Source: Thecamonas trahens ATCC 50062 (lineage: Eukaryota > Protista > Apusomonadida). From it: DNA of 64,000 nt. Below the pieces are notes generated by a model, which worked only from the letters and a program-made list of their open reading frames with translations, ran no database searches and was not told where the DNA came from. Made by a program: the position numbers and the translations under genes. This document shows, piece after piece, positions 1-18,680 of this stretch (positions within the stretch are counted from its first letter, which is position 1; every line of letters starts with the position of its first letter). Where the stretch lies: NCBI RefSeq assembly GCF_000142905.1, contig NW_013657670.1:335498-399497 (forward strand), read 5' to 3'.

Positions 1-1236
1 CTTTTTGGCCGGCCTCGTCGTAGGCGGCGACTCGGGAACAAAGACCGACGGTGAAGCCGCAATCGTAAATGAGGCTGTCCGTGGAACAAACGGCGACGCG
101 AGTGTGTACGCGGCACGCGCAGAGTGCGGCGCCGACGGTGAGCTGCTGAGCCGCTGCTTCTTGCGTACCTTGCCCAACAGGCCCGGCAGTGGCGTCTCTT
201 CGCGCGGCGTCTCAAACTGAGCGAACGTCCTCAGCAGATTGGGCGTTGGCGTTGGCATTGCCGGTGCTCGCGACGGCGCTCGTCGTGGACGGTGCGACGG
301 CGAGTCGCTTGATGGACTGCTGGGGCCCGCCGCGTCCGCGGCCTTGATCAGCGCCGCGGTGAACGGGGTGAGGGCGAGTGGCGTGGCGAGCGACATGCCA
401 CTTGCGCTCAGCGCTGCGGTTGCAGTCGGCGTCGTCGGCAAGCATAACGCCCCGCTCTGGGTCATCGACATGCCCAGTGAGGCTGAGAGTCGCGAAACAG
501 AGGCCTGCAGTGTGTTGGAGAGCTGTGGCGAGTATGCGGCGGCATACGGTGACGTCGGCTTGCGCGGCGAGGTGATGCGCGCCACGCTCGGCGGCGACGC
601 CTGCAGAGCATCGGCACAGGCCTGTAGGAGCGCCACAATCGCCATCGAGTACGCACCGGTGAGAGGCGGGCCCATCCGGACAACCGTGTCCTCGGTTGTG
701 GACAGTCCGAGGCTATCAAAGGTGGCCATACCGTCGGGAACCCGCGCCGCAGCACGGGCGACGGCGGCAAAGCGGCCGCCGGGCAGGGCGATGACTTTGC
801 CGCTTCCACCAGCAGTGGTCCTCGTGGCGCCTGTCTGAGCAGCGGAGGCTCCCGTCCGTGGGGCGGGAATCACAAACTGGAAGAGCTTGCCCACAAAGAA
901 GGTCTCGACGGCGGTGCGGACAAGGTCCGGGGCGTAGCCTGCGGCAGCGCGGGCAAAGGTCTCTGCCGAGGCGCCAAAGCAGGCGTTGAGCGAGTCGCCA
1001 AAGACCACCAGCGTCCTCGGCTGGGGTGAGGCTCCGTCGGTGACGGCAAAGGCCAGGCGGTAGCGATACCACACAGGACACCCGCGCCTTCTACAGCGGC
1101 GGCAGTCTGCCCGTGGAGTGCCTCCAGACCCTCCCGTCGTCGTCACCACCGTCTTCCGTCGGCACGCCGTACACGCCGGGTACATCGGACCACCCGCGTA
1201 CATCACCTTGAGCACCGTCCCTGTCACACGCGGCAT
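1..1236 (-). CDS. DDIAS: DDIAS/noxin-like protein (N-terminal RPA70C-type Zn-binding OB fold plus Ser/Pro-rich tail); 3' end runs off the window
   Basis: Not in the ORF track. Manual translation from ATG 1236 is open to base 1: MPRVTGTVLKVMYAGGPMYPACTACRRK...DCRRC...WYRYRLAFAVTD...LVVFGDSLNACFGASA...AVETFFVGKLFQFVI. This matches the DDIAS pattern YPxCxxC...CxxC...YRYxL...VFGxxLxxxFG...AVETxFVG. Confidence 0.7.
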   Translation of the reverse strand, partial: MPRVTGTVLKVMYAGGPMYPACTACRRKTVVTTTGGSGGTPRADCRRCRRRGCPVWYRYRLAFAVTDGASPQPRTLVVFGDSLNACFGASAETFARAAAGYAPDLVRTAVETFFVGKLFQFVIPAPRTGASAAQTGATRTTAGGSGKVIALPGGRFAAVARAAARVPDGMATFDSLGLSTTEDTVVRMGPPLTGAYSMAIVALLQACADALQASPPSVARITSPRKPTSPYAAAYSPQLSNTLQASVSRLSASLGMSMTQSGALCLPTTPTATAALSASGMSLATPLALTPFTAALIKAADAAGPSSPSSDSPSHRPRRAPSRAPAMPTPTPNLLRTFAQFETPREETPLPGLLGKVRKKQRLSSSPSAPHSARAAYTLASPFVPRTASFTIAASPSVFVPESPPTTRPAKK

Positions 1237-1886
1237 GGTGCAGAGAAGAGAGAGAGAAAGGTTTTCGATGTATGGGTTGTGTGGGGGATGAGTGTGGAGG
1301 TCACCACCACGTCTCCCGCCAATGAGGGGGTATGGGGGGGGGGCGCCTTGTCCGTAAAAAGGTCGTGGTTTGCGTCGGTCGCCCGCCCACCCGCCAACCG
1401 CCGGCCGACTGGTCACCTGCCACCGCTGCAGCAGACGGGCAGCACGGGATGATGACATCATGACGCGACAAGCAGCAGGAAAGGGATTGTGCGTGTGCGC
1501 GTGTGTGTGAAAGGGGGGGCGGGCACCCACCTCACTCCCTCCCTCTCGTNNNNNNNNNNNNNNNNNNNNNNNNNNNNNNNNNNNNNNNNNNNNNNNNNNN
1601 NNNNNNNNNNNNNNNNNNNNNNNNNNNNNNNNNNNNNNNNNNNNNNNNNNNNNNNNNNNNNNNNNNNNNNNNNNNNNNNNNNNNNNNNNNNNNNNNNNNN
1701 NNNNNNNNNNNNNNNNNNNNNNNNNNNNNNNNNNNNNNNNNNNNNNNNNNNNNNNNNNNNNNNNNNNNNNNNNNNNNNNNNNNNNNNNNNNNNNNNNNNN
1801 NNNNNNNNNNNNNNNNNNNNTATTGAGTCCCTCCCCTCTCTCCCCCTCCCCCCCCCCCCCCCTACTCACACTCCGGCCGCCGCGTC

Positions 1887-3187
1887 ATGTCGTGGGTCAT
1901 CTTCACCATTGCCTCTTCGCTGGTGGTGTACGTGGTGGAGTTTGTCCTCGACCGCCGACAGTCACAAGCACTGCAGGAGAAGACGGTTCCACGGGCTCTT
2001 GCCCATCGCCTGACGCCTGAGGCTACTCGCGCCTACAGGCTCACTCGATGTCGCAGGTCTCGTTCAATAGAGTCGAGGCCACCGTCGGCTTTGCCCTCGA
2101 GGTCGCTGTCATCGCCTCGGGCGCTTTGGTCTACCTCTGGGACCTCGCACTCGCCGTCCATCTGGCCGGCCTCTTGGCTTTCGGCGCAGATGCCGCAGCT
2201 GTCGACGGTGCTCGCCACTCCAAGACCCGGGGAGTCATCTTTATTTTGATCGTCTCACTCGTCTCGGCCGTCGTCAAGCTCCCGTTCCAGGTCTTCTCCG
2301 TGATCGGGAGCAGGCAGGCCGATGGCGCTCGGAGTGGGCTGCGAGCCCTGTGTGCGTGGGCTGTTGCGCAAGGCATGGTTTTTGTTCTCTCTGTCGGCGC
2401 AGGCGTACCCATCATCTACACCCTTCTATGGATTCTCGAGTACCACGGATCAGGCTACTGGCTGCTCAATTGGTTCTTCCTCGCCCTACTCTCGGTCACC
2501 ATCTCGGACCTCTACTCGACGGTCGTGGCTCCGTTTTTCGACACCTACGAGTCGCTTCCACCAGGCTCGCTCCGCACCGAGCTCGAGCTCCTCACCGAGC
2601 GGTCGCACTGCCCAGTCTCGGAAATCTACATCCGCAAGTCGAAGGACGAGGTCGGCGGCACCCATTCGAACGCGTTTTTCATGGGCGTCGGCACCTCGCG
2701 CTCGATCGTGCTCTACGACACGCTCCTCAAGCGCATGTCCGAGCAGGACGTTCTGGCCATTATTGCCCACGAGATTGCCCATGTCAAGGCCAACCACTTT
2801 TGGAAGCAGGTTGTGCTCGAGTTTGCCACCATCGGCGTGTTCTTTGGCTCCTTTGCCGCCCTGGTCGAGAACACCGGCTACTACCAGGCCTTTGGCTTTT
2901 CGACCACCAACCCGGCCATCGGCCTCGTCCTCTTCTCGTACATGTACACCCCGATTGCTTCAATGCTGCAGACGCTGCAGCACGTGGCGACGCGGTCGTT
3001 TGAGTTTGCTGCCGATCGCTACGCCGCCAAGCTCGGCTACGACCTCGAGCTGCCGCTCATCAAGCTTCATCTCGTCAACATGGTCAACATCCATGCCGAC
3101 AAGCTTTTCTCACTCTACCACTACTCACATCCTTCGCTCTGTGAGCGCCTCGACGCGCTGGCTACGATCAAAGCCAAGATGAGCTGA
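1887..3187 (+). CDS. STE24: CAAX prenyl protease 1 (peptidase M48A), frameshifted near 2023
   Basis: Multi-TM protein with HSNAFF, IVLYDTLL, HEIAH (HExxH), RSFEFAADRYA and YSHPSLCERL. The N-terminal TM (1887 frame) joins the 2048 frame if one base is added at gaggc^tac. Confidence 0.88.
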
Positions 3188-14994: not shown

Positions 14995-16251
14995 ATGGCG
15001 GATGACGTGCAACTGTACGAGGGGGCGGAGAAGACGCTGCGTGTGCTGTTTGGCAGCTCTGGCGTCCTTCGTGAACAATCGCCGTGTCATCCTCCGACTC
15101 ATGGAGCCGGGCCACGAGGAGACGGGCATGGCCTTAGCGGAAGCGAGAGCGGACGGGAGACGCTGGTGGATGTGACCCGAACGCAATGGGCTCAGTTGCT
15201 TGAGCCGACAGGTTGCACCATCCTCTCCGAGCTCCGCACCTCGGCTGCCTGTGCGTATGTCCTCTCCGAGTCGTCGCTCTTTGTGGCTCACGCCGAGGTC
15301 ATGGTCAAGACCTGCGGCCAGTCACACCTTCTTGCCCTGCTGGCCCCGCTGCTGGAGCTGGCCCGGGGCCTAGGCCTCACTCCGCGCGCCCTCTCTTACG
15401 GCCACAAGGCTTTTGCATGCCAGGATGCACAGCCGGCGCCGTACTGCGATGCCTTTGCTGCTGAGATCGGCGAGCTTGATGCCGTCCTCGCCGCTGCATC
15501 GCCGGCTGCGGCTGCGCCGACGGCGGCTGCCTCCGTCTTTACCGGGCCCGGCGACACGTATTGGGTGTACCACGCTGCGTGGACAGCCCCTGACTCACCG
15601 GCATCCTTCACCCTGCCTGCACCGGCCGACTTTGGTGCCCTGGCCAAGCTCGAGATCATGCTCGTCAATCCCGACACCGCCGCGCTCGCCCAGTTTGACG
15701 TCGCTGCCGTCCGCGACGCTGCGCTCGCCGATCCTCTTGTGGAGCGCCCGGTCACTGCCGCCGAGCTGCTGGACATGGTGCCGCCGGCGAGGCCCGTCCC
15801 GGGGGCAGGCGCCGAGCCGGCGGTGGGCGACTCGCCGCTTGCGGGACATCTCGTCGATGCTCACGTCTTTGATCCGTGCGGCTACTCGTTCAACGCGCTT
15901 GGCGCGCCAGGTCTGGCGCGCGCCACCACTCCGTTTGCCACCGTCCATGTCACGCCCAACGCGCCAGCGCCGTATCTCTCGTTTGAGACGTCCGAGTCGA
16001 GCTTTGCCGCCGCCGCCCGCGCCTTGCCGACCATGCTTGCCAAGTGCCGGCCACAGCACGCGCTGCTGGTGGTCACCGGCGCTGGCGATGACAAGCTGGC
16101 AGGCGCCGACGCGGTCGCCTCGCTCGCTGCCCGCCACGGCTATGCTGCTTCGACAGCCAGCAACCGCCCGCTGCCGACCAAGCTTGATCGTCCCGGGGCT
16201 TGTCTCGTGGACCTGCCGGCCGTCTACCATCTCATGCCACGCCCGCAGTAG
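14995..16251 (+). CDS. AMD1: S-adenosylmethionine decarboxylase proenzyme (eukaryotic class 2)
   Basis: YEGAEK, AYVLSE|SSLFV autocleavage site, KTCG, FDPCGYSFN, TVHVTP and LSFET. Confidence 0.88.
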   Translation: MADDVQLYEGAEKTLRVLFGSSGVLREQSPCHPPTHGAGPRGDGHGLSGSESGRETLVDVTRTQWAQLLEPTGCTILSELRTSAACAYVLSESSLFVAHAEVMVKTCGQSHLLALLAPLLELARGLGLTPRALSYGHKAFACQDAQPAPYCDAFAAEIGELDAVLAAASPAAAAPTAAASVFTGPGDTYWVYHAAWTAPDSPASFTLPAPADFGALAKLEIMLVNPDTAALAQFDVAAVRDAALADPLVERPVTAAELLDMVPPARPVPGAGAEPAVGDSPLAGHLVDAHVFDPCGYSFNALGAPGLARATTPFATVHVTPNAPAPYLSFETSESSFAAAARALPTMLAKCRPQHALLVVTGAGDDKLAGADAVASLAARHGYAASTASNRPLPTKLDRPGACLVDLPAVYHLMPRPQ

Positions 16252-16281
16252 CTCGGCCTCCTCGCCTGAGAGTAACACCCT

Positions 16282-17892
16282 TTACGGCTTGGTCCATGAT
16301 GTGGCCTTGGTCTCTGTGTTGTAGTAGTAGACCTTGCCGTCGGCAGTGTGGGCCTTCTTCCACTCGGCCTTACCCTTGCCCTTGCCCTTGCCCTTGCTCT
16401 TGCCCTTGCCCTTGCCCTTGAGCAGCGGCTGGGCCTCATTGACCGACCGGCGCGAGCGCGGTGCAGCATTAGACGACGACGACGAGTCCGAGTCGGACGA
16501 GTCCGAGTCGTCATCGTCATACAGCCTCGCCGGCTTGGACTTGGGTGGGCGCGACCTGGACTTGGACTTGGACTTGGACTTGGCCTTGGCCTTTGACTTG
16601 GCCTTGGCCTTTGAAGGGAAGTTCTCGACAAGCGGTGGTGGCACGTTTTCGGGCCCGATGCGGTTGACCTCGACCACGGTTGCAGTCTGGCCGCGCTGGT
16701 ACTGCGAGATGAGCTGCATGGCAAGGAAGAAGCGCTCACGAGTAAGATCGTCACGGCGGCGAACGTCGGCCAGCCGCCACAGCTTGGTCGCGGTCGGCTG
16801 TGGAATCGACGGCAGTCGCCGCATAAACCGCGAGACCTTGATGGCTGAGACCTGATCCGGGTTGATGTCGTCGCGGCAGAGCTCAAAGAGCGACTCGAAC
16901 GCAGGCGTGTAGTTGATCCCGCCCGCGGCTGCCAGCGAGCCCGACGACGGCAACGCGCCGTACTTGGAACGCATCTTGGTGTACTGCACAATCATGTACA
17001 CGCCGCAGGCGCAGCCGGCCAGCGCCAGCACGCCGCCGCCAATGCCAATAAAGATGGCGCCAACGTTCGAAATCGTCGGCTTGGTCGGCGCCGGCACCGG
17101 CGAGTTGGTCGTGCTGTCTCCAGAGCTTGTCCCAGAGCTGGTCTTGGAGGTACTCGGACTTGTCGTTCCCGTGGCAGTTGTCGATGACGAACTTGACAAC
17201 GTCGTTGATGACGAGCCCGTAACAGACGTCGACGATGATCCTGTGGCGGTCGTCGACGATGATCCTGTGGCGGTCGTCGACGATGATCCTGTGGCGGTCG
17301 TCGACGATGACCCCGAAAGCGTCGTCGATGACGATCCCGTGGCCGACGTTGACGAGCTCGTAACGGTTGTCGACGACGAACCCGACGAAGTCGACGACGA
17401 GCATCCGCCGGCGCAGGCGTTGCAGTGTGAGACCGAGATGGTGGTGACGCAATCCGTGGTCTCGCCGTAGACAAAGCTTGGAGCCGAGGTGACCGACTGG
17501 TCGCAGTTAAAGGTGATCTTACCAACGTTGGCCTTGCCGCACGTGCCAGACATGGCGCCATCAGGTAGGGTCATGACCACGCCATCACCCGAGGTAGCCT
17601 TGGCAAAGGTCGGCTCGTTGAGGCCAAGCTGCTTGGAGCCGCCGTCCCACTCCTGGCAGAGAGCCACGTTTGCTGGCGAGGTACACTCGGAGACGGCCAG
17701 GGCCTCACAGACCGCCAGCAGGTATGTAAACTTATCACCGTCCTTGGCCTCGTAGCCCTTACCACCGTTCTGAAAGGCTGACAGATCCACATCACCCAGG
17801 CCACAGTCTGCGCCGTCTGCCAGGCCAGCCATGGCCACGCACGTGACGACGACCACCGCCACCATGACATGCCACACGCCACCCACAGCCAT
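16282..17892 (-). CDS. Type I membrane protein: signal peptide, MRH (M6P-receptor homology) domain, Ser/Thr stalk, TM, EH domain, Lys-rich linker, WW domain
   Basis: Single intronless ORF. MRH Cys pattern (DLS..YLLAVC..CQ..ITFNCD..E..CV..AC); TM VGAIFIGIGGGVLALAGCACGVYMIV; EH-like LWRLAD....DLTRERFFLAMQLI...PPP; WW EWKKAHTADGKVYYYNTETKATSWTKP. Confidence 0.85.
   Translation of the reverse strand: MAVGGVWHVMVAVVVVTCVAMAGLADGADCGLGDVDLSAFQNGGKGYEAKDGDKFTYLLAVCEALAVSECTSPANVALCQEWDGGSKQLGLNEPTFAKATSGDGVVMTLPDGAMSGTCGKANVGKITFNCDQSVTSAPSFVYGETTDCVTTISVSHCNACAGGCSSSTSSGSSSTTVTSSSTSATGSSSTTLSGSSSTTATGSSSTTATGSSSTTATGSSSTSVTGSSSTTLSSSSSTTATGTTSPSTSKTSSGTSSGDSTTNSPVPAPTKPTISNVGAIFIGIGGGVLALAGCACGVYMIVQYTKMRSKYGALPSSGSLAAAGGINYTPAFESLFELCRDDINPDQVSAIKVSRFMRRLPSIPQPTATKLWRLADVRRRDDLTRERFFLAMQLISQYQRGQTATVVEVNRIGPENVPPPLVENFPSKAKAKSKAKAKSKSKSKSRSRPPKSKPARLYDDDDSDSSDSDSSSSSNAAPRSRRSVNEAQPLLKGKGKGKSKGKGKGKGKAEWKKAHTADGKVYYYNTETKATSWTKP
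17190..17400 (-). repeat. 24-nt coding tandem repeat encoding a TATGSSST mucin-like stalk
   Basis: gtcgacgatgatcctgtggcggtc units, three near-perfect plus several degenerate. Confidence 0.85.
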
Positions 17893-18680
17893 GACGACAC
17901 AGAAGAGAGGAAGAGGATGAGGGGGGAGGGGGAGGGGGAGGGAGGGGAGAGGAGGGGTCAGGGGAGGGGTTGGAGGTTGGGGGGTGGGGGGGTTGGGGTG
18001 GGGTGGGGTTGAGAGCGGTGTGCCTAATGGCCACACAGCCCCTCTGCCCCTGCCCCTGCCCCTGCCCCTGCCCCTGCCCCCTGACCCCTGACCCTTGCCA
18101 CTGCCTTGTNNNNNNNNNNNNNNNNNNNNNNNNNNNNNNNNNNNNNNNNNNNNNNNNNNNNNNNNNNNNNNNNNNNNNNNNNNNNNNNNNNNNNNNNNNN
18201 NNNNNNNNNNNNNNNNNNNNNNNNNNNNNNNNNNNNNNNNNNNNNNNNNNNNNNNNNNNNNNNNNNNNNNNNNNNNNNNNNNNNNNNNNNNNNNNNNNNN
18301 NNNNNNNNNNNNNNNNNNNNNNNNNNNNNNNNNNNNNNNNNNNNNNNNNNNNNNNNNNNNNNNNNNNNNNNNNNNNNNNNNNNNNNNNNNNNNNNNNNNN
18401 NNNNNNNNNNNNNNNNNNNNNNNNNNNNNNNNNNNNNNNNNNNNNNNNNNNNNNNNNNNNNNNNNNNNNNNNNNNNNNNNNNNNNNNNNNNNNNNNNNNN
18501 NNNNNNNNNNNNNNNNNNNNNNNNNGGTCCCGACCCTTCGCCACCTCGCCCCTACCCCCCCCCCCCCCCCCCCCCCCTCCCCTCCCCCCTCCTCCGTTTG
18601 GCGACACCACCACCACCACCACCACCACCACCACCACCACTCGACTCCACTTACCCATACACTCAGAGACTGGACGGGCT

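What the first reader, a model, noticed from the sequence alone, without database searches (positions are those of the whole stretch)
16282..17892. Self-contained sorting receptor: MRH ectodomain with EH and WW domains in its own cytoplasmic tail
Seen: one intronless ORF encodes a signal peptide, an MRH-like Cys domain (about 17413-17805), a Ser/Thr stalk, a TM (about 16984-17064), a juxtamembrane YGAL (YxxPhi), an EH-like domain (about 16640-16911), Lys-rich and acidic Ser clusters, and a canonical WW domain at the C-terminus. Known: CD-MPR, CI-MPR and Atg27 have short tails with linear motifs only, and EH domains (NPF binders) normally sit in soluble adaptors such as Eps15, intersectin and EHD. 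Inference: this receptor may recruit endocytic machinery (NPF and Pro-rich partners) directly. I know of no described protein with this architecture.
Basis: partly seen in the sequence, partly recalled or inferred. Interest (0 to 1): 0.85.

Follow-up and report, generated by a model that had tools for sequence, protein, structure and literature searches.

The report
MPR-like receptor with EH and WW tail
A single-exon gene of the protist Thecamonas trahens encodes a membrane receptor whose outer part folds like a mannose-6-phosphate receptor and whose inner tail carries two protein-binding domains (EH and WW) normally found in soluble endocytosis adaptors, a combination I found in no other protein, though its function is untested.

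Summary
Window 17892..16282 (minus strand) is one intact 536-codon ORF. It encodes a signal peptide, a P-type-lectin (MRH/CIMR) domain, a 113-residue stalk that is 71% Ser/Thr, one TM helix, a YGAL motif, an EH domain, polybasic and acidic clusters, an EAQPLL dileucine motif and a C-terminal WW domain.

Sequence and fold both support the three domains:
- MRH: a family profile hits CI-MPR at E 1.5e-60. The model (pLDDT 88) matches CI-/CD-MPR domains at TM 0.65-0.76.
- EH: Pfam 23.5-25.6 bits against a cut-off of 22. The model (pLDDT about 90-96) best matches solved EH domains.
- WW: Pfam 39 bits, FBP11/Prp40 type.

The organism is Thecamonas trahens. An exhaustive search of 1.84 billion representatives found no protein sharing two of the three modules. 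The only relative of the tail is a 584-bp metagenome fragment that conserves the EH end, the linker motifs and the WW (63% identity).

Two T. trahens paralogues carry MRH-TM tails ending in a degenerate WW, so domain-bearing tails are a lineage habit. Only this gene has an EH domain.

Caveats: only Gln of the Q-R-E-Y sugar site survives, the EH calcium loop is degenerate, and transcription is not shown. I rate it a new variant of a known kind, of moderate interest. Other first readers of this scan noted the paralogues elsewhere in the same genome.

The parts
17812..17892 (-). Start codon and predicted signal peptide (residues 1-27, hydrophobic core 6-24)
   Evidence: Kyte-Doolittle window 6-24 scores 2.31. 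No dedicated signal-peptide predictor was available.
17404..17814 (-). P-type lectin (MRH/CIMR) fold ectodomain, residues about 27-163. Family-conserved Cys at 62, 70, 79, 130, 148 and 160 (also C118). Gln80 is kept, Asn122 sits at the essential Arg position, and Thr150 at the Tyr position.
   Evidence: profile against CI-MPR E 1.5e-60; best repeats D5, D14, D9, D15, D3; pLDDT 88, pTM 0.83; Foldseek CI-MPR/CD-MPR TM 0.65-0.76.
17065..17403 (-). Mucin-like Ser/Thr stalk, residues 164-276 (71% S+T), encoded partly by 24/48-bp tandem repeats
16984..17064 (-). Single transmembrane helix, residues 277-303, followed by basic residues (KMRSK)
16951..16962 (-). Juxtamembrane YGAL (YxxPhi), residues 311-314. 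Equivalent motifs in the paralogues are YRAL, YRPL and YEVL.
16612..16920 (-). EH domain, residues about 325-427, including its C-terminal Pro-rich tail PPPLVENFPSK. Pocket Trp372 is kept and the EF loop (376-387) is degenerate.
   Evidence: Pfam EH above cut-off; ungapped alignment to intersectin and Eps15 EH; pLDDT about 90-96; top PDB hits AtEH1/Pan1, gamma-synergin, Eps15 EH1.
16369..16611 (-). Disordered linker, residues 428-508: polybasic (KA/KS)n 428-447, acidic Ser cluster YDDDDSDSSDSDSSSSS 458-474, EAQPLL ([DE]xxxLL) 486-491, polybasic (KG)n 492-509
   Evidence: (pLDDT about 50). The acidic cluster, RRSVNEAxPLL and the polybasic runs are conserved in the metagenome orthologue fragment L009.
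16285..16368 (-). C-terminal WW domain, residues 509-536, FBP11/Prp40 type (YYYNTETK...SWTKP); stop codon at 16282-16284
   Evidence: Prp40 WW E 2e-10; pLDDT 91-95; rmsd 0.6-0.7 A to Prp40 and FBP11 WW.

Best explanation
This is a lineage-specific (apusomonad) member of the MPR/ATG27 P-type-lectin receptor superfamily in Thecamonas trahens. It is a type I membrane protein. A single MRH-fold domain is held on a heavily O-glycosylatable stalk on the luminal or extracellular side. The cytosolic tail combines ordinary adaptor-complex sorting signals (YxxPhi eight residues after the membrane, an acidic Ser cluster, [DE]xxxLL) with two folded peptide-recognition modules. Most likely mechanism (inferred, not shown): the protein cycles between the surface or endosomes and the TGN. 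Its EH domain binds NPF-type motifs of trafficking proteins, for example the NPF-repeat N-termini of the organism's SCAMPs. Its FBP11-type WW domain binds Pro-rich ligands. The cargo receptor would thus tether part of the coat or accessory machinery in cis, instead of relying only on short linear motifs. The luminal ligand is probably not mannose 6-phosphate, because three of the four canonical contact residues are replaced. Shown here: the ORF, the three folds, the topology-compatible layout, conservation of the tail in a second organism, and the existence of NPF-bearing candidate ligands. Inferred: localisation, ligand binding and trafficking role.
For: Intact ORF with uniform coding signal. 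MRH fold. EH. WW. The paralogue L004 (AMSG_03648) is a clear ATG27/Man-6-P_recep member (71 and 62 bits) and is 40% identical to this ectodomain. Paralogues L002 (AMSG_07409) and L005 have the same MRH-stalk-TM-YxxL-tail layout ending in a WW-like module, and a metagenome orthologue of L002 (P0001) keeps it. The orthologue fragment L009/P0009 conserves the EH C-terminus, acidic cluster, dileucine motif, polybasic runs and WW at 63% identity with dN/dS about 0.56. NPF-x-NPF clusters occur at 14 places in the genome against 2 in the control, three of them at the N-termini of SCAMP genes. Independent contigs bridge EH, TM and stalk.
Against: There is no usable RNA or protein evidence. The runs that hold the locus are of unknown kind, and one metatranscriptome gives only three short pieces in the stalk and MRH end. 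Only Gln of the sugar site Q-R-E-Y is kept (Arg to Asn122, Tyr to Thr150, Glu not in register), so lectin activity is doubtful. In the EH domain the pocket Leu four residues before the Trp is Ala, and calcium ligands 3, 5 and 12 are Arg, so NPF affinity may be weak or altered. The single ENTH protein found shows no NPF. The second-species evidence covers only the last EH helix onward and does not show TM or MRH in that organism.
Confidence: 0.6

Rival explanations
1. It is a cell-surface recognition or phagocytic receptor rather than a TGN-endosome sorting receptor. The long mucin-like stalk displays the lectin-fold domain at the surface of this bacterivorous gliding flagellate. The EH and FBP11-type (formin-binding-type) WW domains couple ligand engagement to actin and endocytic machinery for uptake or adhesion.
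For: A 113-residue stalk that is 71% Ser/Thr is typical of surface-exposed proteins. The WW is closest to FBP11/Prp40-type domains. The loss of M6P contact residues argues against classic hydrolase sorting.
Against: The YxxPhi close to the membrane, the acidic cluster and the dileucine motif are the classic intracellular sorting signals of MPRs (established knowledge). There is no localisation data. The nearest relatives are ATG27/MPR-like proteins.
Confidence: 0.2
2. It is an ATG27-like membrane scaffold with no cargo of its own. The MRH-fold domain is structural, and the protein's job is to place EH/WW interaction sites on a particular vesicle class (for example Atg9-type or recycling vesicles), acting as a membrane-anchored adaptor.
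For: The sugar-site residues are lost. The closest clearly named paralogue matches Pfam ATG27. The tail is dominated by interaction modules.
Against: The ectodomain is well conserved among paralogues, with an invariant CQxW and Asn, which suggests a maintained binding surface. The stalk would be needless for a purely structural luminal domain.
Confidence: 0.12
3. It is a signalling receptor processed by regulated proteolysis. The released tail would use its polybasic (NLS-like) runs and Prp40/TCERG1-type WW in the nucleus.
For: The WW is most similar to those of nuclear splicing and transcription factors, and the tail has two long polybasic runs.
Against: There is no protease-site evidence. 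EH domains and YxxPhi/dileucine/acidic motifs point to membrane traffic. The polybasic runs are microsatellite-encoded.
Confidence: 0.04
4. It is a gene-model or assembly artefact: two genes, or non-coding low-complexity DNA, read as one ORF in a GC-rich genome.
For: Long spurious ORFs are common here. There is an assembly gap about 215 bp upstream of the ATG (about 18106-18540). Transcription is not shown.
Against: All domains lie in one frame with no internal Met that could start a separate EH-WW gene outside the TM. GC3 is high in nine of ten blocks. Independent contigs bridge EH, TM and stalk. Paralogues have the same layout. The tail is conserved in another organism.
Confidence: 0.04

Closest known systems
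Cation-dependent mannose-6-phosphate receptor / ATG27 (single-MRH type I receptors; Pfam PF02157, PF09451)
   Same: One P-type-lectin fold domain with conserved disulfide cysteines, a single TM, and a cytosolic tail with YxxPhi, an acidic cluster and a dileucine-type motif. Fold match TM 0.59-0.66 to CD-MPR. A paralogue in the same genome is a clear family member.
   Different: The tail is 233 residues and contains folded EH and WW domains. There is a long Ser/Thr stalk. Only Gln of the M6P contact set Q-R-E-Y is kept. Pfam MPR models do not reach threshold on this protein.
Cation-independent MPR (CIMR repeats, PF00878)
   Same: Best sequence and structure matches. The family profile hits repeats D5, D14, D9, D15 and D3. 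Foldseek TM is 0.74-0.76 to domain 8 and to the N-terminal three-domain fragment (domains 1-3).
   Different: One repeat instead of fifteen, no IGF2 or FnII parts, and a different tail.
Eps15 / Ede1 / Pan1 / AtEH1 / intersectin EH domains (PF12763)
   Same: Two EF-hand fold with the conserved pocket Trp and the C-terminal Pro-rich extension (PPxLV...PSK). Top structural hits are AtEH1/Pan1 and Eps15 EH1.
   Different: Here a single EH sits in the tail of a transmembrane protein rather than in a soluble multi-EH scaffold. The calcium loop is degenerate and the pocket Leu is Ala.
FBP11 / Prp40 / TCERG1 WW domains (PF00397)
   Same: About 50-70% identity over 26-33 residues, both Trp and the final Pro present, and a YYYN core.
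   Different: Here the domain is the extreme C-terminus of a membrane receptor tail.
Thecamonas trahens paralogues AMSG_07409 (L002) and the C57 gene (L005)
   Same: MRH-like ectodomain, stalk, TM, juxtamembrane YxxL, an acidic or dileucine stretch and a C-terminal WW-type module in register with this WW.
   Different: They have Pro-rich rather than Ser/Thr stalks and no EH domain. Their WW-like module has lost the second Trp. L002 adds a CxxC-x10-CxxC zinc ribbon.

Membership tests
P-type lectin / MRH (CIMR) fold superfamily | Significant sequence similarity to MPR repeats | tested here: met
   phmmer against CI-MPR chains E 1.1e-5. Family profile E 1.5e-60, best single repeat 47-52 bits. Pfam models alone do not reach threshold on this protein.
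P-type lectin / MRH (CIMR) fold superfamily | Flattened beta-barrel fold with conserved disulfide cysteines | tested here: met
   AF2 model pLDDT 88, all-beta. Foldseek probability 1.0, TM 0.65-0.76 to CI-/CD-MPR, then OS-9, GNPTG and XTP3-B. Six cysteines are (nearly) invariant in the family.
Functional mannose-6-phosphate receptor | Q-R-E-Y sugar-contact residues | tested here: not met
   HMM alignment to CI-MPR D3 and D5, whose Q, R, E and Y positions I recalled from the literature and matched to the chain numbering. Gln80 is kept. The essential Arg aligns with the family-invariant Asn122, Tyr with Thr150, and Glu is not in register.
Functional mannose-6-phosphate receptor | Type I topology with Tyr and/or dileucine tail motif (the operational criterion of bioRxiv 10.64898/2026.10.22.760878) | tested here: met
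   Signal-like N-terminus, one TM, YGAL and EAQPLL. Criterion quoted.
EH domain (PF12763) | Score above Pfam gathering threshold | tested here: met
   23.5 bits on the whole protein, 25.6 on the tail, cut-off 22; 27.2 bits in the genome scan.
EH domain (PF12763) | Pair of EF-hands fold with C-terminal Pro-rich extension | tested here: met
   Model pLDDT about 90-96 over residues 328-427, with four core helices and a short fifth. Best PDB matches are all EH domains. PPPLVENFPSK aligns with LPPxLVPP...K of other EH domains.
EH domain (PF12763) | NPF-pocket residues (conserved Trp and Leu) | tested here: inconclusive
   Trp372 is conserved, but the Leu four residues before it is Ala. Binding was not tested.
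EH domain (PF12763) | Canonical calcium-binding EF loop | tested here: not met
   The loop DVRRRDDLTRER has Arg at ligand positions 3, 5 and 12. From memory, not every EH domain binds calcium, so I do not treat this as excluding membership.
WW domain (PF00397) | Score above threshold, two Trp about 22 residues apart, terminal Pro, three-stranded sheet | tested here: met
   39.1 bits against 26.9. W511...W533..P536. pLDDT 91-95 with the first two strands assigned as full strands and the third as a two-residue bridge. Rmsd 0.6-0.7 A to Prp40 and FBP11 WW.

The most novel reading that the evidence does not exclude
Apusomonads have hard-wired adaptor-type modules into the tails of a small family of MPR-like receptors: EH plus WW here, and a zinc ribbon plus a WW-like module in paralogues. 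The receptor itself would then nucleate coat or accessory proteins (NPF-bearing SCAMPs and others, Pro-rich partners), a 'cargo with a built-in adaptor' mode of sorting not described in any model organism.
Probability: 0.3. Interest if true: 0.7.

Novelty: new variant of a known kind. Interest (0 to 1): 0.55.

Why it matters
Sorting receptors are thought to talk to coats only through short linear motifs, and EH and WW domains are thought of as parts of soluble adaptors. A natural protein that fuses the two sides is a ready-made experiment. It asks whether tethering adaptor modules to cargo is sufficient for sorting, and which NPF or Pro-rich partners matter. It comes from a lineage that, from general knowledge, branches close to animals and fungi. 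It also shows that the MPR family diversified by tail-domain shuffling, not only by MRH repeat number. That point is absent from the recent pan-eukaryotic MPR survey, which scored tails only for Tyr and dileucine motifs. The protein is uncharacterised. Its sequence is held letter for letter in a public protein atlas, but I found no record or name for it in the other protein collection, so the gain is interpretation rather than new sequence.

Tried and rejected
- Word-indexed homologue searches with the whole protein, the ectodomain region and the tail all returned nothing. The first was probably swamped by low-complexity words. They are uninformative.
- The exact 536-aa sequence is not in the 15-billion-protein collection, so I obtained no source name or accession for it. 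The protein atlas holds it letter for letter.
- Two JGI metagenome scans, with the tail alignment and the ectodomain alignment, gave no relatives. One attempt failed because the alignment was too diverse.
- The atlas feature search gave no usable hit.
- An ectodomain tree of 11 family members is unresolved: only one starred branch, which does not involve this gene. I make no claim about the order in which WW and EH were gained.
- Epsin as the EH ligand: the single ENTH locus shows FGDF and clathrin-box-like motifs but no NPF in any downstream frame. I rejected it as a specific candidate. SCAMP N-termini are better candidates.
- I first considered the conserved PPPLVENFP an intramolecular ligand for the protein's own WW. 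I dropped this because it aligns with the standard Pro-rich C-terminal extension of EH domains.
- Expression: all four runs laid are contigs only, and three are of unknown kind. I draw no conclusion on transcript ends.
Full report
**What is there**

Window 17892..16282 (minus strand) is one uninterrupted ORF of 536 codons starting at an ATG. The longer GTG-initiated frame upstream translates only Pro-rich low-complexity DNA, and I take that to be 5' UTR.

Third-position GC is 0.72-0.86 in nine of the ten 50-codon blocks I checked. It is 0.56 in the repeat-rich stalk block and 0.77 overall, similar to the convergent AdoMetDC gene that ends 30 bp away. The frame therefore looks coding from end to end.

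The layout:
- hydrophobic N-terminus, residues 6-24
- Cys-rich domain, about residues 27-163
- stalk, residues 164-276, 71% Ser/Thr, partly encoded by 24/48-bp tandem repeats
- basic juxtamembrane residues and YGAL at 311-314
- folded region, about residues 325-427
- polybasic (KA/KS)n run
- acidic cluster YDDDDSDSSDSDSSSSS, residues 458-474
- EAQPLL, residues 486-491, a [DE]xxxLL motif
- polybasic (KG)n run
- WW domain, residues 509-536, ending at the stop codon

**The three domains**

WW: Pfam gives 39.1 bits against a cut-off of 26.9. The best solved relatives are the Prp40 and FBP11/PRPF40A WW domains at E 2e-10.

EH: Pfam gives 23.5 bits on the whole protein and 25.6 on the tail alone, against a cut-off of 22.
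- The alignment to the intersectin and Eps15 EH domains has no gaps through the core.
- The pocket Trp is kept (W372 in KLWRLAD).
- The Leu four residues before it is Ala.
- The EF loop DVRRRDDLTRER has Arg at calcium-ligand positions 3, 5 and 12.
- The conserved PPPLVENFPSK that follows corresponds to the Pro-rich C-terminal extension seen in other EH domains: LPPELVPP in P0119 and LPPEYIPP in intersectin.

An AlphaFold2 model of the tail (20-row alignment) gives pLDDT about 90-96 for residues 328-427, about 50 for the linker and 91-95 for the WW. Its best PDB matches are EH domains: AtEH1/Pan1 (TM 0.76 by target), gamma-synergin, Eps15 EH1, EHD1 and Eps15 EH3. Next come TCERG1, Prp40 and FBP11 WW domains, the last two at 0.6-0.7 A rmsd. 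The atlas's own model of the protein gives the same picture.

MRH: no Pfam model reaches threshold on this protein, but several other lines do.
- phmmer hits CI-MPR chains at E 1e-5.
- A profile of this ectodomain with 12 relatives (alignment A1) hits bovine CI-MPR at E 1.5e-60. The best repeats are D5 (47-52 bits), D14, D9, D15 and D3.
- The model has pLDDT 88 and pTM 0.83.
- All of the top 43 Foldseek ranks shown are CI-MPR or CD-MPR domains (TM 0.59-0.76), followed by OS-9, GNPTG and XTP3-B.

The fold claim is therefore solid. The lectin claim is not. I took the residue numbers of the M6P contact set of CI-MPR D3 and D5 (Q, R, E, Y) from memory of the literature, and they fit the numbering of the matched chain. 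In the HMM alignments to those repeats:
- the Gln is kept (C-Q80-E-W)
- the essential Arg aligns with an Asn that is nearly invariant in the whole apusomonad family (N122)
- the Tyr aligns with Thr150
- the Glu is out of register

I therefore do not file the protein as an M6P receptor.

**Organism and relatives**

Cluster look-ups of paralogue hits name Thecamonas trahens ATCC 50062: AMSG_07409, AMSG_03648 ('Autophagy-related protein 27') and AMSG_11094.

The same 28.7-Mb assembly holds six further places that match the ectodomain.
- L004 (AMSG_03648) is a clear ATG27/Man-6-P_recep member (71 and 62 bits) with a short tail.
- L002 (AMSG_07409, 416-aa ORF) and L005 (485-aa ORF) have an MRH-like domain, a Pro-rich stalk, a TM, a juxtamembrane YxxL (YRAL, YEVL) and a C-terminal module.
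- That C-terminal module is 63% identical between L002 and L005. It aligns in register with the WW of the window gene, but the second Trp is replaced by Ser. Pfam WW gives 24.3 bits on L002, below the cut-off.
- L002 also has a CxxC-x10-CxxC zinc ribbon.
- A metagenome orthologue of L002 (P0001) keeps that whole layout.

Receptor tails that carry domains are therefore a habit of this lineage. The EH domain occurs only in the window gene.

**Rarity**

phmmer of the whole protein against 1.84 billion representatives gave 187 hits at E<=0.001. Among the 150 listed, each matches one module only: ectodomain, EH or WW.

The one exception in kind is P0009, a 62-residue ORF on a 584-bp metagenome contig (L009). 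Read upstream in frame, it aligns at 63% identity from the last EH helix (LISQ) to the stop codon. The aligned stretch runs through PPPLVEN[FY]PSK, the polybasic run, LYDxDDSDS, RRSVNEAxPLL and the WW. dN/dS is about 0.56 over 123 codons. Upstream of LISQ the contig turns AT-rich, with a stop codon and a polypyrimidine-cag, which looks like an intron in that organism.

This shows that the EH-linker-WW tail is maintained in a second species. It does not show the TM or the MRH domain there.

Two metagenome scans, three word-indexed searches and the atlas feature search added nothing.

No paper in the library describes MRH plus EH plus WW. A 2026 preprint that surveys MPRs in 53 eukaryotes includes T. 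trahens. It scores tails only for Tyr and dileucine motifs, and notes dileucine in two T. trahens homologues.

**Is it real DNA and real RNA?**

Contigs from three small public runs of 'organism A' (kind not on record) cover 15948-17700 at 100% identity, apart from three skipped simple repeats and a short gap at 17293-17308. One of them (16770-17256) bridges EH, TM and stalk, so the junction does not depend on this assembly.

A subsurface metatranscriptome holds three identical short pieces (17165-17459). That is weak evidence at best. Transcript structure remains untested.

An assembly gap lies about 215 bp upstream of the ATG.

**Mechanism**

The signal-like N-terminus, the single TM and the basic residues after it fit a type I topology, with the disulfide-rich domain outside and the tail in the cytosol.

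The tail has the classic signals read by AP complexes. It also has an EH and a WW domain separated by about 80 disordered residues.

Candidate EH ligands exist in the same genome. In-frame NPF-x-NPF clusters occur at 14 places against 2 for the reversed-pattern control. Three of them form the N-termini of SCAMP genes. From memory of the literature, SCAMP N-terminal NPF repeats are known EH ligands in animals. The only ENTH protein found shows no NPF.

My best reading is a cycling MPR/ATG27-type receptor that also holds NPF- and Pro-rich partners in cis. The rivals are:
- a surface or phagocytic receptor, suggested by the long mucin stalk
- an ATG27-like membrane-anchored scaffold without cargo
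- a proteolytically released signalling tail
- a gene-model artefact

They are weighed in the Rival explanations section. The genome also has a Stealth (GNPT-like) gene and other CIMR loci. Classic M6P sorting may therefore be served by other receptors.

**Verdict**

The protein is a new variant of a known kind: an MPR-superfamily receptor with an unprecedented tail. Its sequence is already held in a public protein atlas.

Other first-stage notes of this scan flagged the WW-tailed and zinc-ribbon paralogues and the degenerate Q-R-E-Y elsewhere in the same genome. I found and checked these independently.

Noticed in passing
L002 (G000:C36:32736-36116), ORF L002:706-1953 minus strand: The paralogue AMSG_07409 has an MRH-like domain, a Pro-rich stalk, a TM and YRAL, then CPGCATLNMEDAKYCKACGG (CxxC-x10-CxxC) and a WW-like C-terminus. 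By my reading the zinc ribbon has the spacing of RanBP2/NZF fingers. Pfam gives only sub-threshold zinc-ribbon hits.
   Followed up: partly
L005 (G000:C57:248760-252641), ORF 1171-2625 plus strand: A third MRH-like receptor with a long (TPGP)n stalk, YEVL after the TM and the same WW-like C-terminal module as L002 (63% identity), in which the second Trp is Ser.
   Followed up: partly
G000:C41:298346-298438, C4:263031-263072, C14:384707-384754: Three SCAMP genes (Pfam SCAMP 131-166 bits just downstream) begin with acidic NPF repeats such as MADNPFESSGSDHNPFDETEDDANPF. From memory, this resembles the NPF-repeat N-termini of animal SCAMPs, so the arrangement may be old.
   Followed up: partly
window 14995-16251 (+) and 16282 (-): The AdoMetDC-like gene and the receptor gene converge with only 30 bp between their stop codons. 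One public contig (15948-16360) spans both ends, so the 3' UTRs must overlap if both genes are transcribed.
   Followed up: no
window about 18106-18540: An assembly gap (run of N) lies about 215 bp upstream of the receptor's start codon. It is flanked by (CTGCCC)n, poly-C and (CAC)n simple repeats.
   Followed up: no
P0101 (metagenome protein, 1060 aa): An unrelated protist-like type I membrane protein with a large Cys-rich ectodomain, one TM and three cytosolic WW domains. WW domains in receptor tails are therefore not unique to Thecamonas.
   Followed up: no
L009:1-62: The metagenome relative appears to have an intron inside the last EH helix (an AT-rich stretch, a stop codon and polypyrimidine-cag), where the T. 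trahens gene has none.
   Followed up: partly
L012 (G000:C18:267939-271259): A Stealth_CR2 (GNPTAB-like) match of 164 bits in an 809-aa open frame. The organism probably has the M6P-tagging enzyme.
   Followed up: no
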